IMG/VR virus record: IMGVR_UViG_3300036770_008729
Location: 62,001-126,000 of that record
Length of the DNA stretch: 64,000 bases
Reading direction: 5' to 3' (one strand)
Below are positions 440 to 64,000 of this stretch, piece after piece. The number at the start of each line of letters is the position of its first letter. Within the stretch, counting starts at the first letter, position 1. The notes under the pieces were generated by a model. It ran no database searches. It saw only the letters and a program-made list of their open reading frames with translations, and was not told the origin of the DNA. The position numbers and the translations under genes were made by a program.

Positions 440-447
440 TATCTTTG
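440..447 (+). promoter_or_regulatory. Bacteroidota-type sigma70 -7 element TAnnTTTG (TATCTTTG)
   Basis: Matches the known Bacteroidota -7 consensus, upstream of ATG 462. Confidence 0.55.
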
Positions 448-461
448 TGTAAAATTAAAAT

Positions 462-650
462 ATGGCAACAGAAAAAAACATAGTAAAGTTAGAAAAAGAA
501 ATCCGAGCTAAAATGATGCAAATTCGCTCCGGTAAAACAACACCCAAAGATTCTGGTATTGGTAAGTTAATCAACTTGATGAAAAGTTTTGATGAGCCGT
601 TACACGGACAAATTATGAATGAGTATAAACAATTAATAACTAAACAATGA
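462..650 (+). CDS. hypothetical protein
   Basis: 62 aa ORF behind a TAnnTTTG motif, first of a 3-gene run. Confidence 0.6.
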   Translation: MATEKNIVKLEKEIRAKMMQIRSGKTTPKDSGIGKLINLMKSFDEPLHGQIMNEYKQLITKQ

Positions 651-656
651 GTACAA

Positions 657-866
657 ATGACAAAAACAATTAAATTTATCTTGATTACTTTCGCAGTAAT
701 CTTACTCGAAACTCTCTACTTCGAGTTCGCGGTCAGTAGAGAAATTAACCTATGGATAGGTAGTATCCTTTCCATTTTAGCGGTGTTCCTTCTATTAGGA
801 TACGGACACTATATTTACAAACTCCTAATTGATGTATTAAAAATTAAAAACAACGAAAACCAATAA
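657..866 (+). CDS. small membrane protein (2 TM)
   Basis: Two hydrophobic stretches; directly upstream of SPFH gene. Confidence 0.65.
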   Translation: MTKTIKFILITFAVILLETLYFEFAVSREINLWIGSILSILAVFLLLGYGHYIYKLLIDVLKIKNNENQ

Positions 867-869
867 ACT

Positions 870-3253: not shown

Positions 3254-3700
3254 TTAGAACTCATCATCATCTATTATAGTTGGATCATATGGATGAAAAT
3301 CTCTTCTTTTCTTATAGTTAATTGTAGGTTTTTTCTCAATAAAATCTTCTATTTTATCATACAACCTTAAACACTCATCATCTATATCTTTTAATTGTAA
3401 TTCTTTACCATTGTAACTGATAGTTCTGTTGTTATCATCAAGTGTAACATTTCCATCCATTAGATATATGATGTAAACACCGGGTTCGATTTCTACTACA
3501 CCTTTTACAACTTTTATACCATCTTGAAGGCGAGCGGATTGAATAGAGTGATTGTCAATCATTCTGTGAATTTTTTCTAATGTATCTCTGTCCTCTTTTT
3601 TATCGATGTTCAAAACTCTACGAGTTCCTCTTACAAGTCTTTGCATTAAAGGTTCCTTTTTAGGCTCTTCAAATTCTTCGAATAATTTTATATACTTCAT
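3254..3700 (-). CDS. hypothetical protein with CTS-like N-terminus
   Basis: Starts MKYIKLFEEFE; AATATATA 4 nt upstream. Confidence 0.75.
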   Translation of the reverse strand: MKYIKLFEEFEEPKKEPLMQRLVRGTRRVLNIDKKEDRDTLEKIHRMIDNHSIQSARLQDGIKVVKGVVEIEPGVYIIYLMDGNVTLDDNNRTISYNGKELQLKDIDDECLRLYDKIEDFIEKKPTINYKKRRDFHPYDPTIIDDDEF

Positions 3701-3704
3701 ATAT

Positions 3705-3712
3705 TATATATT
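3705..3712 (-). promoter_or_regulatory. AATATATA motif 4 nt before ATG (putative phage late promoter)
   Basis: Recurrent fixed-spacing motif before many starts. Confidence 0.5.
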
Positions 3713-3724
3713 AATTTTTTTTTA

Positions 3725-3732
3725 TATATTTG
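3725..3732 (+). promoter_or_regulatory. TAnnTTTG (TATATTTG) host-type promoter element
   Basis: Upstream of ATG 3741; divergent from the AATATATA-driven gene. Confidence 0.6.
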
Positions 3733-3740
3733 TAATTGAA

Positions 3741-4265
3741 ATGAATAAATGGAAATTTATAAAAGCACTCAACTCACCACTTAAACCATTTAAGTTAAAA
3801 TTTTACTTTGGTAAAATAAGTGTAGGTGTGCCTTATTTCTTCCCACGTAGAACCGTAAAAGATCCTGGTAAACCCGGATACCTTAAATTTGTAGATAAAA
3901 AATTTGGCATTGATGTAGTTTCACTTGGATGGAAAACTAAATGGAGTAGTACTGATTATCGATTAGAATGGGAGCCAAGAATATCATTTGTTTTTTTTAA
4001 GTGGCAATTTGTTATCTTCTTCAATGCACCAGAGTCAGAACACTATTGGCCGATTTGGCTTTACTATCATAATGATACCGATAAGACTAAATCGATTAAA
4101 GAAAGAATCGAACAATGTCAACAGGAATATCCCCAGATATGGGAAAGATCTCAAAATGGAAAAAAAGAGACCATAAATTATTATGACTATGTCTTAAAAG
4201 ATAAATGGAAAAAGAAACCACTTGATGAGGTTAGAGATAAAAAATTAGATAAGATATTAAAATAA
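3741..4265 (+). CDS. aromatic-rich hypothetical protein with C-terminal RDKKLDKIL tail
   Basis: Start reassigned to ATG 3741 (MNKWKF) behind promoter motif. Confidence 0.75.
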   Translation: MNKWKFIKALNSPLKPFKLKFYFGKISVGVPYFFPRRTVKDPGKPGYLKFVDKKFGIDVVSLGWKTKWSSTDYRLEWEPRISFVFFKWQFVIFFNAPESEHYWPIWLYYHNDTDKTKSIKERIEQCQQEYPQIWERSQNGKKETINYYDYVLKDKWKKKPLDEVRDKKLDKILK

Positions 4266-4269: not shown

Positions 4270-7200
4270 TCAATTTATTTTGTTAACAATTTTGTTTATA
4301 ACCTTAATATATTCTAAATCTATAATCTTTATTAGGTAAATTCCAGTCTTAGATTCTCCTAAATCTTGTTTTATTTTAGTAATACCTTGACTAACACTTT
4401 GCTTTTTTTGACTTATAAGTTTACCACTAATATCATAAACTTCTATCATAAGCTGTGTTTGATTTTTAGTAATATATTCTACAACAAACTCATTTTGTGT
4501 TGGATTAGGATATACTTTTGCATCCACTTCATCTAATTTAATTTGTGAAGTCTTAACAATCAAACTATCATTATTAGGATTTGCTTGTCTTTGTGTTATA
4601 CAACCAGCTTGTATTACTAAAGTTCTCCAAGTACTAGTTCCACAATTAGTTACTGATCGAACTGATAAAGTTCCTCCATTGAATCCCGATGAGAATGTAA
4701 CATCGATTATTCTACTAATGGAAGAACCAGTAGTTCCATTTGGTAACATCCATTGATAACTTGTTGCGCCATTTACTGCTACAATACTGTAAGTGGATGT
4801 TGCTCCTATGTTACCACATGTTGGTCCTGAGATTGCTCCGGGCACTGGTGGTGTTTTACTTATTGATAATGTTCTTGCTGTACTTCTAACACCACAAGCG
4901 TTTTGTGCTTGAACTTGTATAGTACCTCCAGTAAATTGTGGACTAAACTGTACTAATACATTTCTAGTACCTTGACCTTGAACTATTGTGGCGTTGGATG
5001 GTGCTGTCCAAAAATATGAAGTCGCTCCTGATACTGTACTGCTTGAATACAATACATTACTTGATGTTTGATCTACATTAGTATAAGCAGAACAAACATT
5101 TGTTGTACCTGTAATTCTAGTTGGTGTTGCAGGTGCATTAGTACCCGAACTTGTGACAGTTAAGGTACTTGGTGATCCAGTACCACAACTATTGATTGAT
5201 GCCACTGTTATGTTCCCACTTACAAATGAACTTGTAATAGTGACTTGGATAGTATTAGTACCTTGACCATTGTTTAATGTAATACCATTTGGTACTGTCC
5301 AAGAATAACCAATAGTGGCGTCATACATTGGTGATATTGAGTATGAAGTAGTTGTAGCACAAGTACTTGTTGGACCACTAATCGGACCTGGTATTCCAGG
5401 TAAAGAGTTGATTGTGATAGTAGATGAAGCTGATGATATACAATTGCCTGTTGATGCAGTGTATGTCATTGTACTTGTATTTTTAGCATAAACTGTATTT
5501 CTAATATCACCAGTATAAGATTGTGTTGCTGTTGGATTTATATATAATCCAGTTAATGGTGACCAGGTTACCATTGTTGGAGCATATATACCAAACTTCA
5601 TGTTTGGACGATACTTACTACTTATAAGATTGTTTGCTTCATTAAGTGGTTCACAAACTGAAAAGTCATTATCATAACCTCCATAAACTGAGTTAAATGA
5701 AGTTTGACTAAACTCTACTGCTGAGTTTGTACCAGTACAGTTGCTACAAGAATTGTTTACATCATTGTCGTGACAGATCTCTATTACAATATTGTAAAGT
5801 GGATTCCATGTAAATGATTGATTAAAAGAATATACTTTCCATCCAACTGTAGGTGCTTGTTCTTGTCCAGTAGTGTAAACAGTTACAAAAGGACCTACGG
5901 TAACACTTAAAAGACTACCACTTTCTGTAATATAACCATAAGATAAGTTGTCATTTATGGTGTGAGCTATTTTAATTGTAAAGTTATTTTGGTAACCAGT
6001 ACCTTGTGATAGTACTTTTAATGCTAATGAATTTATATCACCAGCAACTAAACCAAGTGCAAGTAATTCTGATGATCTAATTAGATATTGCACTCTTGAA
6101 CCTTCATAGCTACTTGTATAAGGTGTAATACCTGATTGACCAGTAAGAGTTGTATTGACTCCTAATTGACGACTGAATGTAGCTGATCCTCCTGTTGCTG
6201 TTAATGTTGTAATTGAATTACTACAAGCAGTTGTTATTGAAGGTGTAACTGATAAAGCAGATGGTGTTGGGTTTATTTGTATGTCTACAGATGAAGAAGA
6301 ACTACAACCATCTAAAGTCGATGTTAAAGTATATGTTCCTTCATTATTGTATGTAGCGTTATTAATAGTTGGTGACTGTTGTGATGATGTATAGTTATTT
6401 GGTCCAACCCAACTAAATGTATTACCAATATCAGAACTTCCAATTAAACTTATAGTTGAATTTTGACATACAGAACTATTGTTTGTACTAGCATCTGTTA
6501 AAGGTATAGCTTTTATAGTCACACTAACTGGTATATTTGATGAACCACATTCTGAGGTAATAGTTAGTGAGTAGTTACCAGCATCAGCATTTGTAGTATT
6601 GTCAATTAAGAGTGATGGTGTTTCAGCACTTGGATTGATTGATGGATCAATTACTATACTATTTTTATACCATTGGTATTGCACTTGACTACCAGTTGCT
6701 ACAACTGTTAAATCTATTGGATCATTAAAACAAACAGATGATATTGTTGATGGTTGTGAAACAATTTGTAAAGTAGGTATTCCAGTTATATTAATAACAT
6801 CACTAACACTACAACTTCTGTAAGTTGAAGTTAAAGTATAACTATTTAATCCTACTAAAGCAGATGGTATAGTTGCATTTAAAGTACTTGCTGAAAAACT
6901 AGGACCTGTCCAACTGATTGTTGGTGCTACTGTATTTAAAGTAATGGTAATGCTCCAGTCATTAAATGTACCTATATCACCAGTATAGTCATCAGTAATA
7001 CGAAGTGTCCAAACACCATCAGCACTTCCAGTTAAGTTAGAAAAAGGTTGCTCAGGTGTGTATGTTCCTGTGAATGGAGCTGTACCTGATGTTATAGCGG
7101 TACCTGAAGTAGAGAATACTGTGTTAACATAGTTGTCACCAGTACTTCCATTATCACTTGATAAATCTATTGAAGAACCATTTGGAGCAATTAAAGTTAA

Positions 7201-8763: not shown

Positions 8764-8982
8764 GGTCAATAATTACTTTTAGTATATATTCAATAAATGT
8801 AAAAATTGATGAATGAAAAAGAAAGAATCGAAATTTATACAAATTGTCTACAGAATTTCTACAAATAATTTTACTCCGATATTTGTTATTATCATCCTGG
8901 TAGATTTATCACTCTGGATAAATTAAGAAGTGATAAGTTAAATATGTTGGGGATTTAATTTGGTCTCCAATAGATTTTTCAC

Positions 8983-8990
8983 TATTTTTG
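8983..8990 (+). promoter_or_regulatory. TAnnTTTG (TATTTTTG) element 4 nt before ATG 8995
   Basis: Consensus match with conserved spacing. Confidence 0.6.
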
Positions 8991-8994: not shown

Positions 8995-9142
8995 ATGACT
9001 CTAAATGAATTAGAAAAAATAGCAGACTTTTATATGATGGATTTAGAATCTATCATTGATGATATTGATGGTGCAGTAGGCTTTTGAGGAAAAACCTAAA
9101 TCAGAAATAAGAAATGATAAATTAGAAGAATTGGGAATATGA
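8995..9142 (+). pseudogene. small gene split by a +1 frameshift at TTT-TGA (mutation, assembly error or programmed shift)
   Basis: MTLNELEKIADFYMMDLESIIDDIDGAVGF stops at 9085-9087; +1 frame continues EEKPKSEIRNDKLEELGI and ends in an ATGA overlap with the next gene. Confidence 0.55.
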
Positions 9143-12736: not shown

Positions 12737-12781
12737 AAAAATATTTATATTTTAGGTATATATTAAAAAACTTTTAGACAA

Positions 12782-13114: not shown

Positions 13115-13125
13115 ATAGTATATAT

Positions 13126-13818
13126 TTATTTTATATATGAGCTATCTATTTCAAATCCTATAAAATTTCGATTTAATTCTTTTGCTTTGCTTGCTGTGGT
13201 TCCACTTCCCATAAATGGATCTAAAACTAAATCATCTTCTTCAGTTGTTAATTTGATACAAAGTTCTGGTATAAGTGGATGAAAAGGTGCGGGATGACCG
13301 GATTGTTTGATTGGTGGAATATCCCAAACTTCACTCTTGAATTCTTTAGGTAGATTATCTTTGAATACTTTAGGCTTTTCTTTTACTAGCCAGAAGATAT
13401 ATTCGGTGGTTGGTGTCAATATATCTTTTCTGATATTTGGTGAGTTTTTTCTATTCCAAATTATTATTTGATATAGTTTGAAATTGGTATCTCTAACTAG
13501 TTCATATGGATTGTAAGCGATATTTTTGTTTCTTCTAACTTTATGATTGTAGAACATTGAACCATCTGGCTTTAGTATTCTATGACATTCGTTTAAAATT
13601 TCTTTTTGCCAATTAGTATAATCTTCCTCATTCATATCATCACCATAAGTTGAGTAATCGATATTAAATTTAGACCAGATTTGATTTCCTATTTTCTTTT
13701 TACCACTTAGTCCTTTTTTGTTATAAGGTGGTGATGTGATGATAGTATTAATTGAATTATCTGAAATATTTTTCATTCCAGATAAACAATCTAAATTATG
13801 AATTTTATTAATTTCCAA
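13126..13818 (-). CDS. DNA methyltransferase (N6-A/N4-C, beta class)
   Basis: TSPPYN, HPAPF, VLDPFMGSGTT, FIGFEID. Confidence 0.92.
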   Translation of the reverse strand: MEINKIHNLDCLSGMKNISDNSINTIITSPPYNKKGLSGKKKIGNQIWSKFNIDYSTYGDDMNEEDYTNWQKEILNECHRILKPDGSMFYNHKVRRNKNIAYNPYELVRDTNFKLYQIIIWNRKNSPNIRKDILTPTTEYIFWLVKEKPKVFKDNLPKEFKSEVWDIPPIKQSGHPAPFHPLIPELCIKLTTEEDDLVLDPFMGSGTTASKAKELNRNFIGFEIDSSYIK

Positions 13819-17511: not shown

Positions 17512-17536
17512 ATTTTTATATATTAATAAAATTTAT

Positions 17537-17544
17537 TATATTTG
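17537..17544 (+). promoter_or_regulatory. TAnnTTTG element 4 nt before ATG 17549
   Basis: TATATTTG. Confidence 0.6.
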
Positions 17545-18775: not shown

Positions 18776-20040
18776 ATATTAAGAGATACATACCAACCTA
18801 TGAAGAAGCTGTAGAGTTATCCTCTTTTTCTATGTCACCTTTTTATGAGACTAAATTGGTGGTTGATGGTTATAATGTGTCTTTATTTAACTATCGCTTG
18901 GCAAACTATGGTGATTTCAAAAATCCACTTCCCGGTAAAGAAGGATTTGAAATGAGAGGTCTTACTTTTGTATTCAATACTGATGGTTCTCTATACAAAA
19001 GATATATCTTATTACATAAATTTTTCAACTTAAATCAAACTGAAGATTCTCTTTATTCGGAAGTAAAAGATTTAAAAATTAAAACTATACAGAATAAAGA
19101 AGATGGTTCTATTGCTTCTTTTGTAAAACTACCTAATGGTAGAGTAGTTGGTAAAACTAAAATGGGATTTGATAATCTTCAATCTGAGGCAATCAATAGA
19201 ATCTATAATTCTAACAAAGAACTAAAGAAATTTGTTAATTGGTCATTAGATAATGATATAGTTTCAATTTTCGAATATGTGTCACCATCTAACAGAATTG
19301 TTTTAAAATATAATAAAGAAGAATTAATACTTCTTAAACTTCGTTGTAATAAAACTGGTAAGTATTTAAATATGCCTGATTATACTTTTCAGATCGGTAA
19401 TTTAAAAGTGGCTGAGTTTGAAATGTCTACTACTTTAGATGACGTTTTAAAACTTAATGAAACTGAAATTGACAAAGAAGGTAGGGTAATTCATTTTGAA
19501 GGAGACCATTTTGTTAAAGTAAAGAATAATTGGTATGTATCATTACATGGATTACTTACTGAAGACATCTATAAAGAAAATGTTATTATTTCAAACATCT
19601 TAGATGATAAGATAGATGATATAATTGGTCAGATACCACAAGATGATACCTATACTCATAACAGAATTAATAAAATAATCTCTATTGTGAAAAAGTCGGT
19701 CAATGACAAAGTGTCAGAAATAAATGACGCTTATCTACATTTTGTCAATTTAGGTATATCTAAAAAAGATTATGCTATCAATTACAGAATTGATAATGAT
19801 AACTTTGTTTTTGTTATGAATATGATAAAGCATAATGAATTGAAATCTCTTTCTGAAAAAGAAGTAATTGACATTTATAAAGATTATGATTCTTATGAGA
19901 AATCTTTAATAAGAACTGATGTTTGGGAAATGGCTAAAGAGTTTATTAGAGATAAAACCAAAAGACTATTGATTGCTAGAGATTGGTTAAAGGAAAAAGA
20001 CGATAATTTATTTTTTATAGATTTAGAAGGTGATAACTAA
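18772..20040 (+). CDS. T4 Rnl1-like RNA ligase
   Basis: EMRGLTF, HKFFNLNQ, motif I KEDGS, FEYVSPSNRIV, EGRVI, VKVKNNWYVSLH. Confidence 0.88.
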   Translation: MNIKRYIPTYEEAVELSSFSMSPFYETKLVVDGYNVSLFNYRLANYGDFKNPLPGKEGFEMRGLTFVFNTDGSLYKRYILLHKFFNLNQTEDSLYSEVKDLKIKTIQNKEDGSIASFVKLPNGRVVGKTKMGFDNLQSEAINRIYNSNKELKKFVNWSLDNDIVSIFEYVSPSNRIVLKYNKEELILLKLRCNKTGKYLNMPDYTFQIGNLKVAEFEMSTTLDDVLKLNETEIDKEGRVIHFEGDHFVKVKNNWYVSLHGLLTEDIYKENVIISNILDDKIDDIIGQIPQDDTYTHNRINKIISIVKKSVNDKVSEINDAYLHFVNLGISKKDYAINYRIDNDNFVFVMNMIKHNELKSLSEKEVIDIYKDYDSYEKSLIRTDVWEMAKEFIRDKTKRLLIARDWLKEKDDNLFFIDLEGDN

Positions 20041-20050
20041 TATATAGTTA

Positions 20051-23671: not shown

Positions 23672-23761
23672 AAAAATAATTTTTTTACTATTTGTATATA
23701 TTATTTTATCATTTTACAATAATTGATTTTTTAATCAAAAATATTTAAAAATATATACATC

Positions 23762-26182: not shown

Positions 26183-26262
26183 ATAATCTATATATTAAAA
26201 TCACTTTTCCATTTTTGAAAAAAAGAAAAATCTATATATACCAACAAAATCAAATTAATACT

Positions 26263-31220: not shown

Positions 31221-31228
31221 TATATTTG
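31221..31228 (+). promoter_or_regulatory. TAnnTTTG element 4 nt before uvsE ATG
   Basis: TATATTTG. Confidence 0.6.
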
Positions 31229-35094: not shown

Positions 35095-35350
35095 AGAGTA
35101 TATATTCTCTAAATAATTTAGAGAAATTAGTTTTTCTCCTTTTTTCTTTCTTCTGGTGTTAAAAGTCCCTTTCCAAAGTTTTTTATTCTTTCTTCGTATC
35201 TGGTTTTGACTCTTTCAGAAATAGGAACTGGTGTTCCTTCATCATAGATGGTGATTCTTATACAATAGAATTCAAAGAAGGTGAAAAAACAATCAAGAAA
35301 AAATCTGAAATCGTTAAAAAGAAAAACCAGTAATAAAGATTGATACTATA

Positions 35351-37680: not shown

Positions 37681-37722
37681 TATACTTATTTATTTTAATA
37701 TATATAGAAAAAAATATTAGAT

Positions 37723-40870: not shown

Positions 40871-40900
40871 ATAAGTATATATTAATATACTTTTTTGAAA

Positions 40901-41735: not shown

Positions 41736-41763
41736 AATAATGGACAAATATAAGGATAAAATC

Positions 41764-43611: not shown

Positions 43612-43701
43612 TATTTGATTACCAAGATTTTTTGAGTAAGCTAAGTATATATATGTTTTTTTTTATTTTGTTTTTAGCTTTGTTTTTTAGGTGGTCAATT
43701 T

Positions 43702-43709
43702 AATATATA
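43702..43709 (+). promoter_or_regulatory. AATATATA motif 4 nt before ATG 43714
   Basis: Heads the CTS-like gene cluster. Confidence 0.5.
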
Positions 43710-46341: not shown

Positions 46342-46343
46342 TA

Positions 46344-46793: not shown

Positions 46794-46866
46794 AAGATGG
46801 GGGAGTGGACATCTACTTTTATGATTGGCATTTCTCGCTAATGCTAGCCCCTAATTCCCAATCAAC
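46789..46866 (-). ncRNA. candidate small structured RNA
   Basis: GC-rich for this genome; stems GATTGG/CCAATC, GCATT/AATGC, AGTAG(AA)GATG/CATCTACT; minus-strand TATATTTG at 46878-46885. Confidence 0.35.
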
Positions 46867-46924
46867 CAATTTATTTCCAAATATAATAATTAAATTTATA
46901 TATAACTAAAATTAATTTCTTATT

Positions 46925-47005
46925 ATGTTCAGTTCGGGAAACATCTTCATTATGATTTTTGGCATTCTGTTAGCCTTAGGATTAATTTTTAATTTTAATA
47001 TATAA
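46925..47005 (+). CDS. putative 26 aa single-TM peptide
   Basis: MFSSGNIFIMIFGILLALGLIFNFNI; below track cutoff. Confidence 0.45.
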   Translation: MFSSGNIFIMIFGILLALGLIFNFNI

Positions 47006-47008
47006 GTT

Positions 47009-48077: not shown

Positions 48078-48174
48078 AAACTTAACATTAGAAACTTAAC
48101 ATTAAGTTAATATAGAAAATTGAAATTTCCAAAGGTTTATCCTCAAATTTTAATTCATCTAAAATATATAAAGT

Positions 48175-49831: not shown

Positions 49832-49932
49832 TAAATTAGAACTTGAACAAAAACCATCAATACATCAAATTAACTCATCACAAAAATAATATTTATATTT
49901 TTAATACAACATATTATTCTTATATTTGTATT

Positions 49933-51166: not shown

Positions 51167-51305
51167 AATTCCCATAAGCCTCATCCAATAGTTCTTGTTG
51201 TTCTTTGTTGTTCTTTGTTGTATTGTACAACATCGGTCATCATTAAATGAAAACAGTTGTACTTTTGCTAATATATAAACAAAATTTAAATATATTAATA
51301 TACCT

Positions 51306-52655: not shown

Positions 52656-52718
52656 AGAAACCAGAAACTCTTAAATTTTTTCTATCTTTAATTCTAATTA
52701 ATTTAATATATTTGTACC

Positions 52719-53184: not shown

Positions 53185-53209
53185 ATTTTATATCCTTATA
53201 TTTGTCATA

Positions 53210-53796: not shown

Positions 53797-53826
53797 TTTC
53801 ATCTTGTGAATTTTAATATATAACTT

Positions 53827-58300: not shown

Positions 58301-58977
58301 ATGTAAATTGTGTTTGGTTTATAAATGGTAATCAAGTAACAAACTGCACCACATCTCAATCTTTTAATACATCTGGAAGTTATTCAGTAACTCTTTCAGT
58401 GACCAATACAAATGGTTGTTCTAACACATCACCAAATATATTGGTGAATGTTTATCCAAAGGCGGTTTCTAACTTTTCAGCTAACCCAATTGTAACAGAT
58501 TTATTAAACCCAAATGTTAGTTTTACCAACTTCTCTACCTCAGGAAATTATCAGTGGTCTTTTGGAGATGGAAACATTTCTTCACTTATAAACCCACAGA
58601 ATACCTATTCTGATACTGGAAGTTATAATGTTCAGTTAATTGTTGTTTCACCTGATGGGTGTAGGGACACTTCTTCACTTGAGATATACATAAGTGATTT
58701 ATTTACATTTTATATTCCTAATGCTTTTACACCGAATGGTGATGGTAAAAATGATGTATTCACACCTCAGATAAGTGGTGCAGAGTGGTATCAATTCTGG
58801 ATTTACAACAGATGGGGAGAGCAAATTTGGGACTCTGGAACTAATGGTGAACCTTGGAATGGAATCTATAAAGGTAGTTTAGTTCAACAAGATGTTTATG
58901 TTTGGAAGTTGATTGTAAAGGAAAAACAACGAGGCAAAAAGCATTTATTTACAGGACATGTTAGTGTTATTAAATAA
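55360..58977 (+). CDS. SprB-repeat/PKD adhesin-like protein with T9SS type B (gliding motility-associated) C-terminal domain
   Basis: Signal peptide; repeated YSWNT...ATGL..G.YTVTVTD..GC units; PKD (WSFGDG); CTD YIPNAFTPNGDGKNDVF...IYNRWGE...WNG...DVYVWK. Confidence 0.9.
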   Translation: MKKLTLFLIATLFSFIAISQPANNNCGTAQNLGTLPTPAACPNGVGANVNVTGTTVNATYPLPYNYLLGCQTGGNQPAPSPDVWYQFVASGNQVNINITPGSSPFLANPSITLWSGSCGSLNGFNCDNNGSNNGNNSATFEPLTPGQTYYIQISGSSATSTGNFNMTVNASNDCNNCLQNVSLVATPNPVNGFYQPGQTINFCLTITGYNQVSSNWLHGVIPTFGNGWNLATLTTTPANSCSTAGNWQWANSNTSTATNLITGPGFYYFSGSGGSGNNFGDNGSTCTRTFCWSIQTKSGCTSGNNLNISVNTTADGETGSWTSPACQGDPNINFAAQLNCCQTTATSTSLTCFGGTNATATANPTGVSPFNYSWNTTPVQTTQTATGLSAGSYTVTVTDNGGCVSSASVTITQPTQLQVTTTSTNASCGQLNGSATATASGGTGPYSYSWNTTPVQTTGTATGLGPGTYTVTATSAGNCQSTGTVTISSTGSITATSTSTNVTCNGANNGTATANPNGSTNYTYLWNTIPPQNTQTATGLAPGSYTCTVTSFGCQTTTTVTITQPPVLTAAITTSNVICNGGNTGSAVVTPNGGTPGYTYLWTTSPNQITATATNLTSGTYSVNVTDLNGCTVIASANITQPQQLNITLVSSQNPGCSGSSTGQIVVSASGGVGPTYFYTLNGGTPQTSGTFTGLSGGTYTISVSDANNCTQQIQVSLTQPFPISSSYTVTNVNCNSGNNGQIQLTTIGGTPPYTYLWSNSSQSPNLTSLTAGTYSVVITDASGCQFNLTNIVVTQPNAINILLTPNPSSICIGQSSSITALIVGGTLPYNFVWSNGQLTQNITVTPTTTTGYTLQVSDANGCGLSANTIINVNPPLTVLTTSSQGTICVGQSSTLTASVTGGNGGPYTYNWNPTAQSGQSIIVTPGTTTLYTVTVGDGCSTPVTSTVTVNVNLLPVVQYTTTALSGCEPLTVTFTNNTPNVNCVWFINGNQVTNCTTSQSFNTSGSYSVTLSVTNTNGCSNTSPNILVNVYPKAVSNFSANPIVTDLLNPNVSFTNFSTSGNYQWSFGDGNISSLINPQNTYSDTGSYNVQLIVVSPDGCRDTSSLEIYISDLFTFYIPNAFTPNGDGKNDVFTPQISGAEWYQFWIYNRWGEQIWDSGTNGEPWNGIYKGSLVQQDVYVWKLIVKEKQRGKKHLFTGHVSVIK

Positions 58978-58980
58978 ATT

Positions 58981-59009
58981 AAAAAACCTGTTGAAAGACA
59001 GGTTTTTTT
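58981..59009 (+). terminator. intrinsic terminator
   Basis: aaaaaacctgt-tgaaag-acaggtttttt. Confidence 0.8.
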
Positions 59010-59037
59010 ATTGCAATTTTTTTACTATATTTGTATT

Positions 59038-59430
59038 ATGAGAAAAGAAAGCATTATAGAAATGATTGATAAAAGAATTATTGAAAACTTTGTCAATGGT
59101 TATAGTCCAGAGTTTATTATAGCTGACATACAATCAAAAACAGATAAAATGTCTGACTTTATTACAAATCAAGGAATTGATTTAGAAAAATTTATTGATA
59201 TGGATTTTGATGTTTTAACTGATGATGATTTCTCAAAAGATAAATTACCAATGACTAGAACTAAATATACAGTTTACTATGTTAAACAATCTAGAAAAAG
59301 AATAAAAGATATAAACTGGATTATTGAGAATTGTAAAAGATTTCCACATTTATCAAAATCACAAGTATTTAGGTTGATTAAACTTAGAGAAAAGTTGAGT
59401 CGTGAGAACGCTATTGAATTACCCTTTTAA
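59038..59430 (+). CDS. hypothetical protein
   Basis: Start reassigned to ATG 59038, 4 nt after TATATTTG (59026-59033). Confidence 0.65.
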   Translation: MRKESIIEMIDKRIIENFVNGYSPEFIIADIQSKTDKMSDFITNQGIDLEKFIDMDFDVLTDDDFSKDKLPMTRTKYTVYYVKQSRKRIKDINWIIENCKRFPHLSKSQVFRLIKLREKLSRENAIELPF

Positions 59431-60162
59431 GTTTCTTATCCATTCAGAGAACTTTATTAAGCTTTCATTAAGTGTCTCAACAAAATTAAAATCTTTTAAG
59501 AAGTCACCAAAGTCTTCAACATAACCTTTTTTACTTTCATCTGTTTTGGTTTGAGTCCATTGCCAGTTAAAACTTAATTGAGTTGGTGTTTTAAACCCGA
59601 AGAATTTTAACACTTCTTTTTCTAATTCAACTGCTTCACTTCCATTCCAGTTATGACCAGTTGCTACAATTCCAACTTCTTTATCCTTTAATAAGTTAGA
59701 TTCTCCTAATGTAGTGTGTCTATTCTCAAGCCAAGTTAATCTTTCAATTAATTGTGTGTAGATAGCATTCATTTTACCCCATCTTATAGATCCAAAAAAG
59801 ATAACTATATCTGCCTCAAAGATTGCATTTGCAACTTTATACATTTCATCTGATTTATTATTGAGTGAAGCCCAACATCTAATTATTTTATGTGGATTCT
59901 TTTCTTTATCCTTTAGAAGTGCGTCTTTTAGACCACAAGTATTTCCTCTTTTAGTTGATACATTACCTTCACATGGAAAGATTTTAAGTTTAGACACATT
60001 AATAATCTCTATACCTTCAATCTTTTTAGCAATTTCATCTGCTATTATAGAAGATTTAGGAAGTTCTTTATCACCAGACCATCTATTAGAAGTAGTAAGA
60101 AAAACAATCTTTTTCTTTTGATTTTTCTTAAGATAGTTGTAAAGTCTTTTCAATTTATCCAT
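59419..60162 (-). CDS. flavodoxin-like / NAD(P)H-dependent FMN reductase family protein
   Basis: LTTSNR, IFPCEG, CWAS, ADIVIFFGSIRWG, VATGHNW; start reassigned to 60162. Confidence 0.75.
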   Translation of the reverse strand: MDKLKRLYNYLKKNQKKKIVFLTTSNRWSGDKELPKSSIIADEIAKKIEGIEIINVSKLKIFPCEGNVSTKRGNTCGLKDALLKDKEKNPHKIIRCWASLNNKSDEMYKVANAIFEADIVIFFGSIRWGKMNAIYTQLIERLTWLENRHTTLGESNLLKDKEVGIVATGHNWNGSEAVELEKEVLKFFGFKTPTQLSFNWQWTQTKTDESKKGYVEDFGDFLKDFNFVETLNESLIKFSEWIRNLKG

Positions 60163-60207
60163 ATTGTATATATAAAAAAAAGAATATACAATCTTAATAT
60201 ATACAAT

Positions 60208-60540
60208 ATGAAAAAGTTTACACAATTAAACGAAGCTAAGTTTTTTACACCAGATCCAAGTATTATTAAAAAATATGCTGCTAGAATTATTCCCCTTTAT
60301 ATAACTGGTGAATTAAAGACTAGAGATACTAAATTAGTAGATGAGTGGTTAGAGATGAATAGGTCATCTGAATCTCACAAAAATGAAAATGTTATTTGTG
60401 ATTTAGAAATTATAGCAATAAAAAACATTTTTGATAATCCACTAACTAATAATGGATATTCTCAATTAGTTCAAGATATAGATGCTGGTTGTCCACGATT
60501 AGAAAGATTTTTAAGACCTATTATTTTCAAAAAGTTCTAA
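60208..60540 (+). CDS. hypothetical protein with CTS-like N-terminus
   Basis: MKKFTQLNEAK; AATATATA (60196-60203) 4 nt upstream. Confidence 0.7.
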   Translation: MKKFTQLNEAKFFTPDPSIIKKYAARIIPLYITGELKTRDTKLVDEWLEMNRSSESHKNENVICDLEIIAIKNIFDNPLTNNGYSQLVQDIDAGCPRLERFLRPIIFKKF

Positions 60541-60601
60541 AACTTTTGAAATTATCAAACATATATATTTTATCATATCTGCATAAATTATATATAGGTT
60601 C

Positions 60602-62020
60602 ATGAAGAATATTTTTTTAACTTTAATATTTTCTCTGATATCAAATCTTTGCTTATCACAAGCTTATTCTACCTGTGCATTAGCCTCTGCGGGTATAGCT
60701 ATATCAAGTGGTGGGTGTATTAATAATCAAACCTTCACAGGGAGTGTAAATATGGCCGGTCTTTGTGTAGGCGGTAATAATCCAGCAATTCACATTAAGT
60801 TTGTAGCTGGTTCTTGTTCACAATTTACAATTACACCAACTGCCAATATCGCTAACATAGGAACTCAAATTCTAACTACTGCGTGTAGTGGTGTTGTTGG
60901 TACAACTGCTTGTCACGAAAATGTTATTGCTGGTGTTCCATTTATGGCAGATGCACATGATAATAGTGGTAATTATTTATTGACACCAGGTACAACTTAT
61001 GTTTTGAGAATATGGGGTGCTGTAGGTACCTCAACATTTAATATTTGTTATAATTCTGGAGTAACAGAGAATCCATCAAACGAATGTTCTGGTGCGTTTG
61101 GTTTAGGAACACTTCCTACGCAGTTTTATAATGGTGGTGATTGCTCATTTACTGGATCTGGAACTGATGCTACAACTTCGGATCCAGCTGCTTCTGGTTT
61201 GTGTGCTGGTTCATTGGAAAATACTCAATGGATTAAATTTCAACCATTGGCTGGTGTTTCTACATTTCAAATTATTGGTAGTTCTATCAATTGTACTGGT
61301 GGTGGATGTGGATTTCAATTTGGTATATTTTCAGGAAGTTGTGGATCTTTAATCTCTGAGGGTTGTTATGGGAATAAAGTTTGCTCTGGTGGACAGTCTG
61401 TATCAGGTCCTACTAACGTTAGTGCTACTGATGGATTTTCAATAGCTTGGTCTGGTACTTCTACAACTGGATTTACAGCAACTATTACAAAAACCGGTGG
61501 TGGTAATTTTATCGGTACAGAGGTTTTTTACTTAGTTATGGATGGCAATGCTGATGCTGATTGTCAATATACTTTACAAGGAACAAATTTACAGGCTTTA
61601 CCAATTGAATTAATCTCTTTTGAAGGTCATTTCAATGGTGAGTTAAACGTTTTACAGTGGTCATGTGCAACTGAAATAAATAATGATTATTTTAGTTTAG
61701 AAAGGTCGGATGATGGAGTAAGTTGGGGAAGTATTGTAAATATATCAGGTGTAGGTAATTCCAACTTAATAACAAATTACTCTTATTATGATAATACTTT
61801 TTTACCTGAAAGGTTTAATTACTATAGATTAAAACAAGTTGACTTCGATGGTAGTTTCAAGTACTTTGATATTATTGCAATAAACAATATGAATATAAAT
61901 AAGCCTAAACTACTAAGAGTTTATAATATCTTAGGGAATAAAGTAGACAAAGAATCAACTGGACTATTGATATATGAATACTCAGATGGTAGTTTCAAAA
62001 AGACATTCGTTAAAGATTAA
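60602..62020 (+). CDS. Cys/Gly-rich secreted protein with Bacteroidota T9SS-type C-terminal region
   Basis: Signal peptide; LPIELISF...WSCATEINNDYFSLERS...YYRLKQVDFDG; short CTD VYNILG...YEYSDGSFKK. Confidence 0.8.
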   Translation: MKNIFLTLIFSLISNLCLSQAYSTCALASAGIAISSGGCINNQTFTGSVNMAGLCVGGNNPAIHIKFVAGSCSQFTITPTANIANIGTQILTTACSGVVGTTACHENVIAGVPFMADAHDNSGNYLLTPGTTYVLRIWGAVGTSTFNICYNSGVTENPSNECSGAFGLGTLPTQFYNGGDCSFTGSGTDATTSDPAASGLCAGSLENTQWIKFQPLAGVSTFQIIGSSINCTGGGCGFQFGIFSGSCGSLISEGCYGNKVCSGGQSVSGPTNVSATDGFSIAWSGTSTTGFTATITKTGGGNFIGTEVFYLVMDGNADADCQYTLQGTNLQALPIELISFEGHFNGELNVLQWSCATEINNDYFSLERSDDGVSWGSIVNISGVGNSNLITNYSYYDNTFLPERFNYYRLKQVDFDGSFKYFDIIAINNMNINKPKLLRVYNILGNKVDKESTGLLIYEYSDGSFKKTFVKD

Positions 62021-62904
62021 TCCTCTATACAAGAAGGTGGCTTTATATTTCTTTTGAATTTCCAATGCATATTCTCCCAATCTTGTATTTCTTTATTAAG
62101 ATTTTTAATTTCCTCAGCAAATAAATTTAATTCCTCTTTTTGAGTATTAAAATCTCTTACTTTATCATTAATTTCATCTTCCTGTTGAGTAAGTTTATCT
62201 TCTTTTCTTTTAAGTTCTTTTGATAAATTTTCTAATTCTTTTTCTTTATCTGAAACTAATTTTAAGTCAGTATCAATTTTAGATTGTAGTTCTGCATACT
62301 TAGAATCTAAATCTTTTGATGATTCTAAAAGACTTCTATCAAAGTTTCTTTCTTTTTCTTTTAAGTCTTGTAATTTATCTTCTAAGTCTAGTTGTTTTTC
62401 AGTAAGATCTCTTGATCGAGTTCTTAATTCATCCTCTTTTTTATCTAATGATTTTAACTCTTCTTTATGCTCAGACTCTCTTTTTTCAACTCTTTTAAGT
62501 CTGATGTCAATCTCCTCTTCTTTGTCTTTGATTCTTCTTTCTCTATTGTTTAAGTCTGTTTCTTTCCATTCTATCTCTTTAACCTTAGATTCGTCCATAG
62601 TTGGACCACTATTTTGTGGAATGGATGAAAGAATCATATCCTCAATGAATGGTATTAATTTCTTACCTAATTGAGCAGGTTGTGGCATTTTTTCAGACCT
62701 CATAAAAGATAACAACTCAGCTTTCCAGTCAATGATTTCAAAAATCTGAGGATTCATCTCAATAACTTCTTTATCAAGTGGAATAGTGTCTCCTTTTAAT
62801 TTATATTTGAATTCTTCAATTATTGTTCCAGATTTTATTAAAAATATCTTTTTATCAGGACTTACATATTGATAATCTGATAAAAGCTTGTGTTTAATCT
62901 TCAT
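62017..62904 (-). CDS. long coiled-coil protein
   Basis: About 170 aa of E/K/L heptads; TATAAATA upstream. Confidence 0.75.
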   Translation of the reverse strand: MKIKHKLLSDYQYVSPDKKIFLIKSGTIIEEFKYKLKGDTIPLDKEVIEMNPQIFEIIDWKAELLSFMRSEKMPQPAQLGKKLIPFIEDMILSSIPQNSGPTMDESKVKEIEWKETDLNNRERRIKDKEEEIDIRLKRVEKRESEHKEELKSLDKKEDELRTRSRDLTEKQLDLEDKLQDLKEKERNFDRSLLESSKDLDSKYAELQSKIDTDLKLVSDKEKELENLSKELKRKEDKLTQQEDEINDKVRDFNTQKEELNLFAEEIKNLNKEIQDWENMHWKFKRNIKPPSCIED

Positions 62905-63006
62905 GTTAGTAGATAAATTTTATTTATATATAAAAAACCTTCTTTTTTGTTTATTATATTGAATTATTTACTTTCTAGATTAATATATAAAATAAATTTC
63001 ATAAAA

Positions 63007-63576
63007 ATGCCAAAAAGAATATTTCTAAAAGAAAATGTAGTTGTAGGGTCAAACCCACCTGGTGGTTATAAATCCTTAGAATTAAACACATCCGGTGATT
63101 TATCTTTAAAAAGTTCGGGTGGAACAGTTTCTGCAGTATCTGGTGGATCTGATATTTTTGTATTCAAAACTTCTTCTCAAGACGATTCAAGTAATACTTT
63201 AGTAAATGATACTGAGCTTTTTTTCACAGCACTTGCAAATTCTACATATATTGTTAATACTTGCTTTATCTTAAATGTAAATGATAGTAGTGGTTATATT
63301 AGTGCTAAAATAGATACTACTAACTCACCAGATGTTTATGGTGATTGGATATTATTAGATAGAGGAAGTGGTGGTCAATATTATGGACAAAGTACTCCTG
63401 TAGTAACTGATACGGTAATCTATGTTGCTGATGAGAGTGGAACATATTCGCTTAACAATAAGTTTTTGATAAAAACATCTACTGAAAGTTTGATTACTGT
63501 TCAATTTAAGTCAGATGGTTCAACTACTGCAACTATGAATACTGGTTCTTATCTTCATGCTCAAAAAGTAGCATAA
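63007..63576 (+). CDS. possible virion structural protein (fibre/decoration-like)
   Basis: S/T/G-rich beta composition; AATATATA upstream; start reassigned to MPKRIF at 63007. Confidence 0.5.
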   Translation: MPKRIFLKENVVVGSNPPGGYKSLELNTSGDLSLKSSGGTVSAVSGGSDIFVFKTSSQDDSSNTLVNDTELFFTALANSTYIVNTCFILNVNDSSGYISAKIDTTNSPDVYGDWILLDRGSGGQYYGQSTPVVTDTVIYVADESGTYSLNNKFLIKTSTESLITVQFKSDGSTTATMNTGSYLHAQKVA

Positions 63577-63613
63577 AATAGTTTTTCTTAATTTTTTTTC
63601 ATATTTTTGTAAT

Positions 63614-64000
63614 ATGAAAAAATCTCAATTAAATAATCTAATCAGATTTTGCTTTAACTTTCATCAAACTATGGATGTTATTTGGGCTCTACAAACACCT
63701 GACTATATTTGGGAAAAGTGGCAAAAGTATATTGGATTTGCACCTAATAAATTAGAATTATACCCATCTAATGACCAGACCATAAAGTGGTTAAAAACTT
63801 GGAATGTTAGTAATGAAGATTGGGAAAAATTAAAAGAAATTATCAACTTTATCCAAGTGGTAAATAGTAAGGCACTTGTGGTGTCTGGTGGTAATGATAA
63901 TGGTAGATTTAATCAATGGTCTCCATCAGAATTAATTTCTGAATTTGAAAATTTAATTGGTGATAAAAATAAAATAAATGATTTAGAATATAAAAGACTA
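63614..64000 (+). CDS. hypothetical protein, runs off the right edge
   Basis: MKKSQLNNLIRFCFNF... open to window end; TATTTTTG (63602-63609) 4 nt upstream. Confidence 0.7.
   Translation, partial: MKKSQLNNLIRFCFNFHQTMDVIWALQTPDYIWEKWQKYIGFAPNKLELYPSNDQTIKWLKTWNVSNEDWEKLKEIINFIQVVNSKALVVSGGNDNGRFNQWSPSELISEFENLIGDKNKINDLEYKRL

What the first reader, a model, noticed from the sequence alone, without database searches (positions are those of the whole stretch)
440..63614. Two 8-mer motifs sit about 4 nt before start codons and broadly separate the two tagged protein classes
Seen: TAnnTTTG ends 4 nt before ATG at 8995, 17549, 31233, 49933, 52719, 59038 and 63614, 5 nt before 53210, and farther before 462, 3741 and 41735. 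AATATATA ends 4 nt before ATG at 3700-, 13114-, 20051, 23762, 35094-, 43714, 47009, 48175, 53827 and 60208, and 5-6 nt before 17511-, 26182- and 40870-. Established: TAnnTTTG is the Bacteroidota primary-sigma -7 element; the T4 late promoter is TATAAATA. Inference: both classes make nearly leaderless mRNAs. The host-type promoter heads many runs of C-tailed proteins (early), while AATATATA heads CTS-like, neck and T9SS genes (late, phage sigma).
Basis: partly seen in the sequence, partly recalled or inferred. Interest (0 to 1): 0.65.

Follow-up and report, generated by a model that had tools for sequence, protein, structure and literature searches.

The report
Leaderless promoters in a Bacteroidota jumbo phage
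Two short DNA motifs in this 281-kb phage are very probably promoters placed so that transcripts begin at the start codon itself, which is rare in the presumed host phylum; no RNA data exist to confirm it.

Summary
Every listed coordinate checks out. Genome-wide (281 kb, 30% GC), AATATATA sits at -12..-5 of 29 gene starts against 0.43 expected. TAnnTTTG does so at 10 starts against 0.40. An unbiased 6-mer scan recovers TTAATATATA-N4-ATG at p ~1e-28.

Both motifs behave as promoters, not translation signals:
- They occur only at heads of transcription units.
- Half sit at divergent junctions, some with ATGs 16-62 nt apart.
- Some follow a terminator directly.
- In orthologous genes of relatives the same motif lies at variable distances from the ATG.

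In flavobacteria the sigma-A box occupies -12..-5 of the mapped start. The phage geometry therefore puts +1 on the A of ATG, giving leaderless mRNA. About half of roughly 134 predicted promoters are of this type.

The AATATATA class heads virion genes and genes for proteins with a capsid-targeting-like N-terminus. It also heads topoisomerase, exonuclease and other DNA-metabolism genes, so it is the main phage-specific promoter, not strictly a late one.

No gp55 homologue and no phage RNA polymerase was found. There is one ECF-like sigma, but its link to the motif is unproven. A third, bipartite class (AAACAA-N13-16-TATATA) also exists. An independent 385-kb relative reproduces the pattern.

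The parts
8983..8990 (+). H (host-type TAnnTTTG) box, 4 nt before ATG 8995
   Evidence: The frame has only 30 codons.
17537..17544 (+). H box, 4 nt before ATG 17549 (138 aa, C-tailed)
   Evidence: Divergent partner of the L site at 17511-, 37 nt away.
31221..31228 (+). H box, 4 nt before ATG 31233 (endonuclease, phrog_8420)
   Evidence: Orthologues keep the box at 4 nt or at 15-23 nt.
49921..49928 (+). H box, 4 nt before ATG 49933
   Evidence: It heads only a 15-codon frame.
52707..52714 (+). H box, 4 nt before ATG 52719 (140 aa)
53197..53204 (+). H box, 5 nt before ATG 53210 (138 aa)
   Evidence: A terminator hairpin and T-run lie directly upstream.
59026..59033 (+). H box, 4 nt before ATG 59038 (130 aa)
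   Evidence: A terminator hairpin and T-run lie directly upstream.
63602..63609 (+). H box, 4 nt before ATG 63614 (C-tailed protein)
440..447 (+). H box with a short leader (14 nt to ATG 462)
3725..3732 (+). H box, 8 nt before ATG 3741
   Evidence: Divergent partner of the L site at 3700-.
41745..41752 (-). H box, 9 nt before ATG 41735
3705..3712 (-). L (TTAATATATA) box, 4 nt before ATG 3700 (N-tagged protein)
13119..13126 (-). L box, 4 nt before ATG 13114
17517..17524 (-). L box, 5 nt before ATG 17511
20039..20046 (+). L box, 4 nt before ATG 20051
   Evidence: The frame has only 25 codons.
23750..23757 (+). L box, 4 nt before ATG 23762
26189..26196 (-). L box, 6 nt before ATG 26182 (N-tagged protein)
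   Evidence: six distinct orthologous upstream sequences (from 9 related loci) keep TAATATATA 4 nt before an ATG while the flanks diverge
35099..35106 (-). L box, 4 nt before ATG 35094 (tRNA nucleotidyltransferase)
40876..40883 (-). L box, 5 nt before ATG 40870 (513 aa, N-tagged)
43702..43709 (+). L box, 4 nt before ATG 43714; heads a run of six N-tagged paralogues
46997..47004 (+). L box, 4 nt before ATG 47009
48163..48170 (+). L box, 4 nt before ATG 48175 (glycosyltransferase, PF13528)
53815..53822 (+). L box, 4 nt before ATG 53827
60167..60173 (-).
   Evidence: Divergent pair with 60208, 45 nt apart.
60196..60203 (+). L box, 4 nt before ATG 60208
60590..60596 (+).
8783..8790 (-). Leadered L box, 19 nt before ATG 8763 (1497-aa T9SS cargo protein)
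12757..12764 (-). Leadered L box, 20 nt before ATG 12736 (head-tail adaptor, phrog_211)
23695..23702 (-). Leadered L box, 23 nt before ATG 23671
   Evidence: orthologues carry the same box 5-25 nt from the ATG
37697..37706 (.). Palindromic L core shared by divergent genes 37680(-) and 37723(+), each with an 18-nt leader
51270..51277 (+). Leadered L box, 28 nt before ATG 51306 (topoisomerase II subunit)
62982..62989 (+). Leadered L box, 17 nt before ATG 63007 (tail-fibre-like N-terminus)
43646..43673 (-). Bipartite promoter-like element AACAAA-N13-ATATATA, 34-36 nt before ATG 43611 (topoisomerase II large subunit)
   Evidence: both halves are conserved upstream of the orthologues while the spacer and leader vary

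Best explanation
The window is part of a 281-kb jumbo phage whose host is probably a member of the Bacteroidota. The phage encodes type IX secretion cargo domains, lacks Shine-Dalgarno sequences and carries TAnnTTTG boxes.

Both motifs are promoter elements on the DNA. TA(t/a)(a/t)TTTG, with a T-rich tract upstream, is the host primary-sigma '-7' box. TTAATATATA is a second, '-10-only' element that is specific to the phage. At about 69 genes either box occupies -12..-5 relative to the A of the ATG. RNA polymerase would then start on that A (T at -1, A at +1), and the mRNA would begin with AUG. Such an mRNA has no leader and would be translated through the 5'-terminal-AUG route.

The TTAATATATA class has a second mode with 13-24-nt leaders, and almost nothing in between. 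This fits the two known ways a ribosome can engage an mRNA.

Host-type promoters head small proteins and auxiliary or nucleotide-metabolism proteins, which are probably early. TTAATATATA is the phage's main promoter, found at about 108 of 375 genes. It heads virion genes, genes for capsid-targeting-like N-tagged proteins and T9SS cargo genes, but also DNA-metabolism genes, so it is probably middle plus late.

Shown: the position statistics, the location at heads of transcription units, the conservation in relatives and the split by tags. Inferred: the exact start site of the L class, the timing, and which factor reads TTAATATATA. That factor is probably host core polymerase plus a phage factor. 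The single ECF-like sigma is a candidate, but a better match for it is the bipartite AAAC-N16-TATATA class.
For: Position statistics
- See the observation check.

Geometry
- In Flavobacterium the box is T-12 A-11 ... T-8 T-7 T-6 G-5, with 4-5 nt between the box and the TSS. It lies at -12 to -5 in F. psychrophilum.
- The phage has 4 nt (13 sites) or 5 nt (5 sites) between the G and the ATG.
- The L logo reads TTAATATATA nnnT ATG A, with T at -1 in 85% of sites and no -35 element.
- Only ATG follows at that offset, never GTG or TTG for L.

Promoter rather than RNA signal
- Motif-bearing starts lie at divergent junctions in 50-56% of cases, against 12% for other genes.
- None lies within 5 nt of an upstream same-strand gene, against 53% for other genes.
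- Eight divergent pairs are both of the leaderless type, with ATGs 16-62 nt apart.
- A terminator hairpin plus T-run lies directly upstream in 8 of 69 cases, against 5 of 241.
- Leader length is bimodal: 45 genes at 4-7 nt, 3 at 8-16 nt and 36 at 17-28 nt.

Conservation
- Orthologues of 26182 keep the box at the leaderless distance while the flanks diverge. Orthologues of 23671 and 31233 carry the same boxes at 5-25 nt.
- 27 related contigs (topoisomerase 58% identical or more) show the same peaks.
- The independent 385-kb genome G007 gives TATATA at -10 in 39 starts against 3.3 expected, with the same bimodality.

Gene classes

Polymerase
- No phage RNA polymerase was found: no Rpb2_6, no T7-type polymerase, and no DxDGD motif in any called protein.
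Against: - No transcript data exist. No RNA run holds this DNA, so no start site is mapped.
- For the L class the distance from box to TSS is assumed by analogy.
  - There is no gp55 homologue.
  - The only sigma is ECF-like, and such sigmas normally need a -35 element.
  - That sigma lies in a unit headed by an L promoter itself.
  - Its orthologues do not co-vary with the motif. G007 has the motif but only a 23%-identical sigma of another subfamily. G009 has ECF-like sigmas but no motif.
- Gene starts are my own calls (first ATG of each long frame).
- About a third of the L genes share the N-terminal tag and may be paralogues, although 38 of the 55 leaderless L genes lack it.
Confidence: 0.78

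Rival explanations
1. The motifs act in the RNA, not the DNA. They would be a translation-initiation enhancer, an operator for a phage RNA-binding repressor (as with T4 RegA), or a cleavage site for an endoribonuclease that trims leaders.
For: - The spacing to the ATG is fixed.
- Bacteroidota use AT-rich, SD-free upstream regions, and upstream regions in general are A-rich here.
- GeneMarkS-2 places Flavobacterium in the class with a non-SD motif near starts.
Against: - The motifs are absent from internal genes of operons: 0% have an upstream gap of 5 nt or less, against 53% for other genes.
- The same boxes lie at variable distances in orthologues and in a second mode at 17-28 nt.
- In divergent pairs with ATGs 16-45 nt apart, any other promoter would have to sit inside the opposite gene.
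- Terminators abut the box.
- TAnnTTTG is an established DNA promoter element at exactly this distance from the TSS.
Confidence: 0.07
2. The pattern is chance in AT-rich DNA, or hitch-hiking: the boxes were copied along with the 5' ends of one expanded paralogous family (the N-tagged proteins).
For: - The genome is 70% A+T.
- 17 of the 55 leaderless L genes, and 12 of the 53 leadered ones, carry the shared N-terminal tag.
Against: - AT-matched simulations never exceed 3 hits, against 29 and 10 observed.
- The offset controls are flat.
- 38 of the 55 leaderless L genes have unrelated N-termini.
- Sequences upstream of the box are not alike.
- The pattern recurs in G007 and in about 27 other contigs.
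Confidence: 0.02
3. The boxes are promoters, but transcription starts a few nucleotides upstream or downstream of the A. The mRNAs would then carry 1-5-nt leaders or use a downstream start codon, so they would not be truly leaderless. Alternatively, TTAATATATA is read by a host alternative sigma and not by a phage factor.
For: - Spacers of 5-7 nt occur in 20 L genes and 5 H genes.
- The distance from box to TSS for the L class is unknown.
- No phage factor has been tied to the motif.
Against: - There is a sharp maximum at exactly 4 nt, with T at -1 and A at +1.
- For the H class the host rule puts +1 on the A.
- The start triplet is exclusively ATG.
- The 10-mer is 8-fold over-represented in the phage. 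The motif is confined to one subclade of related phages, and the related genome G009 has none.
Confidence: 0.13

Closest known systems
Bacteroidota primary-sigma (sigma-A/ABfr) promoters: -7 box TAnnTTTG, weak -33 TTTG
   Same: - The consensus is the same, including no G at the two n positions.
- An AT- or T-rich tract lies upstream.
- The box sits at -12..-5 if +1 is the A of the ATG.
   Different: In the hosts, 87% of leaders exceed 10 nt and only about 5.5% of mRNAs are leaderless. Here 14 of 25 such boxes sit at the leaderless distance.
Leaderless-gene signature of Actinobacteria and Deinococcus (GeneMarkS-2 group C)
   Same: - A -10-type box lies about 10 nt from the start codon.
- It occurs only at first genes of operons.
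- Leadered and leaderless units are mixed, at 25-50% leaderless. Here the figure is about 51%.
   Different: The host phylum is assigned to group B, the non-SD class with leaders (30 of 30 Flavobacterium species). Here the signature belongs to a phage, and it has two different boxes.
T4 late promoters (TATAAATA at about -10, read by gp55 with gp33 and the gp45 clamp)
   Same: - It is an AT-only element of 8-9 bp with no -35.
- It heads virion genes and genes for capsid-targeted proteins.
- The phage depends on host core polymerase.
   Different: - The consensus differs (TAATATATA).
- No gp55 homologue was found by two PHROG profiles or by tblastn.
- No T4 structural homologues were found.
- The class also heads DNA-metabolism genes.
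- T4 late mRNAs are leadered (from general knowledge, not tested here).
phiEco32 middle and late promoters read by the phage sigma gp36
   Same: - A single conserved element (AATGTA) is centred near -11.5.
- It is read by host core polymerase plus a small, divergent phage sigma with sigma-2-like and sigma-4-like domains.
- It covers middle and late genes (PMC12276001).
   Different: - The register differs by about 2 nt if +1 is the A of the ATG.
- Homology between the sigma here and gp36 was not tested.
- No evidence ties the sigma here to the motif.
- phiEco32 transcripts are not described as leaderless.
ECF (group 4) sigma promoters: -35 'AAC', a 16-17-nt spacer, then a short -10
   Same: - The third class, AAAC(AA)-N13-16-TATATA, has the AAC-N16 spacing (the spacing rule is from general knowledge).
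- The phage sigma is ECF-like, and its best solved relative is B. subtilis SigW (E 8e-8).
   Different: - The -10 is TATATA, not CGT-like.
- There are only about 14 members in this genome.
- Much of the signal in relatives comes from one orthologous promoter, that of the topoisomerase gene.

Membership tests
Bacteroidota sigma-A promoter | -7 box TAnnTTTG, with no G at the n positions | tested here: met
   18 sites at 4-5 nt from an ATG, all matching TAhhTTTG. The consensus is TATATTTG.
Bacteroidota sigma-A promoter | Box at -12..-5 of a mapped transcription start | not testable with these tools
   No RNA run holds the DNA.
Bacteroidota sigma-A promoter | Upstream AT-rich tracts or a -33 TTTG | tested here: inconclusive
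   A T-rich tract lies directly upstream of the box. There is no clear TTTG at -33 in the 18 sites. That element is also weak in F. johnsoniae.
Leaderless transcription units | Promoter box at a fixed distance of about 10 nt from the start codon, at first genes of operons only | tested here: met
Leaderless transcription units | AUG start codon at the 5' end | tested here: met
   Only ATG occurs at the offset for L. For H there are 11 ATG and 1 GTG. That the ATG is the actual 5' end is inferred, not shown.
Leaderless transcription units | Mapped 5' triphosphate end on the A of AUG | not testable with these tools
T4-type late transcription (gp55) | gp55 homologue encoded by the phage | tested here: not met
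   phrog_234 and phrog_12791 gave no match. T4 gp55 tblastn gave only chance hits at E>1.
T4-type late transcription (gp55) | Consensus TATAAATA | tested here: not met
   The consensus is TTAATATATA. TATAAATA shows no peak in the close relatives.
Phage sigma with a -10-only promoter (phiEco32 gp36 type) | Phage-encoded sigma-70-family protein | tested here: met
   A 203-aa protein at genome 149159-149770. It matches PF08281 at 1.4e-12 and PF04545 at 1.3e-6, with a weak region 2 match.
Phage sigma with a -10-only promoter (phiEco32 gp36 type) | The sigma co-occurs with the motif across relatives | tested here: inconclusive
   All four near-complete relatives encode ECF-like sigmas. However, the subfamilies differ, and G009 has sigmas but no motif.
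Phage-encoded RNA polymerase promoters (phiKZ, AR9 or T7 type) | Phage RNA polymerase gene | tested here: not met
   No match to PF00562 or PF00940, although the PF00940 control search also hit nothing anywhere. No DxDGD motif occurs in any called protein.

The most novel reading that the evidence does not exclude
A subclade of uncultured Bacteroidota jumbo and huge phages (281-483 kb) has moved about half of its transcription units to true leaderless mRNAs, in a host phylum where these are rare. It does so through two unrelated promoter types set in the same register. One of them, TTAATATATA, is a new -10-only promoter read by a phage factor that is neither gp55-like nor an identifiable orthologous sigma.
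Probability: 0.5. Interest if true: 0.65.

Novelty: new variant of a known kind. Interest (0 to 1): 0.55.

Why it matters
If the start sites are confirmed, three things follow.

1. This phage clade would show that ribosomes of Bacteroidota, which do not use Shine-Dalgarno pairing, can be fed largely with 5'-AUG mRNAs. That gives a natural system for studying leaderless initiation in this phylum.
2. It would supply very compact expression signals: a 10-nt box plus 4 nt. Both a host-dependent and a phage-dependent version would be available for genetic tools in Flavobacteriia and Bacteroidia.
3. It would improve start-codon calling and operon annotation for a large group of metagenomic huge phages. 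The boxes mark transcription units and true starts, for example 3741 and not 3606.

The unidentified reader of TTAATATATA would be a new way of redirecting host polymerase.

Tried and rejected
- **gp55-like sigma:** two PHROG profiles and a tblastn with T4 gp55 found nothing. The weak hits lie in small C-tailed proteins.
- **Phage RNA polymerase:** no match to PF00562 or PF00940, and no DxDGD motif. For PF00940 the control genomes also gave nothing, so that blank is weak.
- **Sigma70_r2 by genome search:** blank, although hmmscan sees a sub-threshold region 2 in the ECF-like protein.
- **T4 structural proteins:** phmmer with 26 T4 proteins gave no hit. Pfam sheath and terminase profiles gave no hit either. 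The virion module is therefore only partly located, through PHROG hits.
- **RNA evidence:** none of the 20 runs holding this DNA is an RNA run.
- **Population variation:** I laid DNA contigs of four runs on 58900-63900. None of the listed variants falls in a box, but only about 0.5 would be expected, so this is uninformative.
- **Close relatives of the sigma:** none in the viral contigs by peptide patterns, and one weak hit among cultured phages.
- **Sigma orthologue co-occurrence with the motif:** inconclusive.
- **Distant relatives found with the 640-aa marker (61-71% identical):** these use Shine-Dalgarno sequences and lack both patterns. The marker is probably a mobile auxiliary gene, so I replaced it with the topoisomerase.
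- **Not used:** structure prediction, complex prediction and the large protein searches, because no claim here rests on them.

Full report
**Setting.**
The window is bases 62001-126000 of a single 281,114-bp virus record with 30% G+C. IMG/VR classes it as a provirus, and CheckV puts it at 94% complete. It encodes:
- T4-type topoisomerase II subunits, an RNA ligase and a DNA methyltransferase;
- a head-tail adaptor;
- several proteins with type IX secretion C-terminal domains (Por_Secre_tail, CHU_C, SprB repeats).

Gene starts have no Shine-Dalgarno signal, only A-rich upstream sequence. The host is therefore very probably a member of the Bacteroidota. The DNA occurs in subsurface and freshwater metagenomes, and no RNA run holds it.

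**The observation.**
Three of the ATGs open only 15-30 codons (8995, 49933, 20051). Two further sites with the ATATATA core were missed (60162-, 60602+).

I tested the pattern on the whole genome in four ways.

1. *Offset control.* Of 128 AATATATA copies, 30 end exactly 4 nt before an ATG that opens 80 or more codons. A further 10, 6 and 4 do so at 5, 6 and 7 nt, against about 1 at other offsets. Of 511 TAnnTTTG copies, 10 and 5 do so at 4 and 5 nt, against about 1.3.
2. *Motif-blind scan.* I scanned all 6-mers at all positions upstream of 374 starts, taking the first ATG of each long frame so that starts were not chosen with the motif in mind. ATATAT at -11 occurs 34 times against 2.4 expected (p 5e-28). 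The scan extends the motif to TTAATATATA. It also picks up TTTGTA at -8.
3. *Simulation.* In 300 simulations from a second-order Markov model of the upstream regions, AATATATA scored 29 observed against a mean of 0.43 (maximum 3). TAnnTTTG scored 10 against 0.40 (maximum 3).
4. *Over-representation.* The 10-mer occurs 64 times against 7-8 expected. About two thirds of all AATATATA copies lie in sense orientation within 30 nt upstream of a start.

**Promoter or RNA signal?**
Five independent lines say promoter.

1. The boxes mark heads of transcription units. 50-56% of motif-bearing starts are at divergent junctions, against 12% of other genes. None lies within 5 nt of an upstream gene on the same strand, against 53%. 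This is the criterion GeneMarkS-2 uses to separate a promoter from a ribosome-binding motif.
2. Eight divergent pairs have a leaderless-type box on both sides, with the two ATGs only 16-62 nt apart. Some share one palindromic core.
3. In 8 of 69 cases a hairpin plus T-run lies directly upstream of the box, against 5 of 241 for other genes. In three of these no room is left for another promoter.
4. Conservation in relatives shows a DNA element that can move relative to the ATG:
   - Orthologues of the gene at 26182 in nine related loci (six distinct upstream sequences) carry TAATATATA 4 nt before an ATG, although the protein N-termini are only 43-59% identical and the flanks are unalignable.
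   - Orthologues of 23671 carry the same box 5-25 nt from the ATG.
   - Orthologues of 31233 carry TAnnTTTG at 4 nt or at 15-23 nt.
5. The distance from the L box to the ATG is bimodal: 45 genes at 4-7 nt, 3 at 8-16 nt and 36 at 17-28 nt.

**Leaderless geometry.**
In F. johnsoniae the box is T-12 A-11 n n T-8 T-7 T-6 G-5, and true promoters have 4 or 5 nt between the box and the start site. 87% of leaders there exceed 10 nt (PMC6847099). In F. psychrophilum the box lies at -12 to -5, and 5.5% of mRNAs are leaderless (PMC9723704).

In the phage, 13 boxes have 4 nt and 5 have 5 nt before the ATG. By the host's own rule the A of the ATG is therefore +1.

The L logo is TTAATATATA-nnnT-ATG-A, with T at -1 in 85% of sites and nothing at -35. 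Only ATG, never GTG or TTG, follows at that offset. The pyrimidine at -1, the purine at +1 and the exclusive AUG are what a 5'-terminal start codon requires. For the L class, however, the distance from box to start site is an inference.

By my calls, 55 L and 14 H genes are of the leaderless type, and 53 L and 11 H genes are leadered. That makes about 134 promoters for 375 genes, half of them leaderless.

**Distribution among relatives.**
- Using the topoisomerase as marker, 27 non-redundant contigs with 58% identity or more (462 kb in total) show the same peaks. For AATATATA, 27, 12, 8 and 4 copies lie at 4, 5, 6 and 7 nt. For TAhhTTTG, 15 and 18 copies lie at 4 and 5 nt.
- Contigs with 45% identity or less show nothing.
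- I fetched two whole relatives. G007 (385 kb, 73% identity) reproduces the de novo result: TATATA at -10 in 39 starts against 3.3 expected, p 6e-29, with the same empty zone at 8-15 nt.
- G009 (246 kb, 58% identity, 26% G+C) has neither pattern.

The trait is therefore conserved within a subclade that includes genomes of 312-483 kb. It is not universal in the wider group.

**Gene classes.**
Host-type boxes head the following, with no virion protein among them:
- small unrelated proteins;
- an endonuclease (phrog_8420), an M28 peptidase and an AAA_33 kinase;
- MgtC and a ClpB-like chaperone (the latter within the unit);
- a metallophosphoesterase.

The L box heads, or lies at the head of units with, the following:
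- a tail-spike or virion structural protein;
- a virion structural protein (phrog_1645, E 9e-125);
- a baseplate wedge subunit;
- the head-tail adaptor;
- a family with tail-fibre-like N-termini;
- the T9SS cargo proteins;
- 29 of the 48 proteins that begin MK(Y/W)(I/L)KxFExF.

That N-terminus resembles the 10-20-residue capsid-targeting propeptides of the T4 internal proteins (PMC5694885). The resemblance is only a lead.

The L box also heads both topoisomerase subunits, an exonuclease, two HNH endonucleases, a CCA-adding enzyme and a glycosyltransferase. 'Late' is therefore too narrow. 'Phage-specific, middle plus late' fits better, as for phiEco32 gp36 promoters.

At unit level the L class has 44 N-tagged and 11 C-tailed genes, and the H class has 1 and 13 (Fisher p 7e-7). 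In G007 the leaderless L genes are 18 N-tagged against 1 C-tailed. Many C-tailed genes sit in units with no recognised promoter.

**Who reads TTAATATATA?**
The genome has no detectable phage RNA polymerase and no gp55 homologue. It has exactly one sigma-70-family gene, for a 203-aa ECF-like protein at genome 149159-149770. That protein matches Sigma70_r4_2 at 1.4e-12, and its best solved relative is SigW at 8e-8.

All four near-complete relatives also encode ECF-size sigmas, but the link to the motif is weak:
- The subfamilies differ. G007, which has the motif, carries only a 23%-identical one.
- G009, which lacks the motif, has two.
- The gene here lies in a unit headed by an L promoter.

ECF sigmas normally need a -35 element, and the L class has none.

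A better match for the ECF-like sigma is a third, smaller class that I found upstream of the topoisomerase gene. It reads AAACAA(A), then 13-16 nt, then (A)TATATA, then a leader of 22-36 nt. Both halves are conserved in the orthologues while the spacer varies. Genome-wide the spacing is enriched, with 14 cases at 13-16 nt against about 0.5 per offset. It is also enriched in relatives, weakly including G009. AAAC-N16 is the classical ECF -35 spacing (from general knowledge). This assignment is a lead only.

**Verdict.**
Reading the motifs as two promoter classes that give leaderless or nearly leaderless mRNAs is well supported in silico. The early/late labels and the 'phage sigma' are only partly supported.

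The kinds of thing involved are all known: host-type and phage-specific promoters, and leaderless mRNAs. The combination is not described in the papers I could search. That combination is:
- a Bacteroidota phage clade with about half of its units leaderless;
- two unrelated boxes set in one register;
- a new -10-only consensus whose reader is unknown.

Noticed in passing
window 43714-47428 (six genes in a row); also 3254-3700(-), 25568-26182(-), 39329-40870(-), 53827-54393; about 48 genes genome-wide: A shared N-terminal peptide, MK(Y/W)(I/L)KxFE(E/D)F, sits on otherwise unrelated proteins, including a CCA-adding enzyme. It resembles the T4 capsid-targeting propeptides. It is also present in G007 and G009 (as MKHIKLFEQFISEE).
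   Followed up: partly
window 3606-4265, 9139-10039, 14918-15732, 17549-17965, 32736-33937, 38615-39299, 40901-41425, 63614-; about 38 genes genome-wide: A shared C-terminal tail, R-D-x-(K/Q)-I-(D)-K-(I/L)-L, sits on many small proteins. The stop codon often overlaps the next ATG. The tail is common in G007 and rare in G009. Its function is unknown; a docking peptide for a hub protein is one idea.
   Followed up: partly
window 4270-8763(-), 55360-58977(+), possibly 60602-62020(+): The phage encodes large secreted proteins with type IX secretion C-terminal sorting domains. One has PKD, P_proprotein and Por_Secre_tail domains; another has SprB repeats, PKD and CHU_C. They are driven by L-type or bipartite promoters.
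   Followed up: partly
window 43646-43673(-); genome-wide about 14 sites: A third promoter-like class, AAACAA-N13-16-TATATA, comes with a leader of about 20-36 nt. It is conserved upstream of the topoisomerase gene in relatives. The spacing matches the ECF sigma -35 'AAC' rule.
   Followed up: partly
genome 149159-149770 (L002:1081-1692), outside the window: This is the only sigma-70-family gene of the phage. It is ECF-like, 203 aa, and sits in a unit headed by a leaderless L promoter at genome 147332.
   Followed up: yes
window 26500-31200: A conserved block of three genes (640, 420 and 498 aa; phrog_22605, phrog_19072 and phrog_35217) is shared at 61-90% identity with many viral contigs. These include contigs whose genes use Shine-Dalgarno sequences, so the block is probably a mobile auxiliary module rather than a lineage marker.
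   Followed up: partly
window 8995, 20051, 49933: Well-formed leaderless promoters are followed by frames of only 30, 25 and 15 codons. The one at 49933 is followed by about 240 nt without a long frame. These may be small proteins, leader peptides or non-coding RNAs.
   Followed up: no
window 63169-63594 and around 59045-59056: In contigs of related strains, deletions and breaks of similarity end just upstream of the H box at 63602 and just inside the gene at 59038. This hints that promoter-plus-gene cassettes are exchanged as units.
   Followed up: no
window 63007-63576; genome 207164, 232593, 238923, 274073, 276824: A family of proteins shares the N-terminus MP(K/R)R(I/L)(F/L)L...G, which looks like tail fibres. 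All are behind L boxes.
   Followed up: no
window 3606 versus 3741: The first ATG of this frame (3606) overlaps the opposite gene by 95 nt. The H box 8 nt before 3741 suggests that 3741 is the true start.
   Followed up: no
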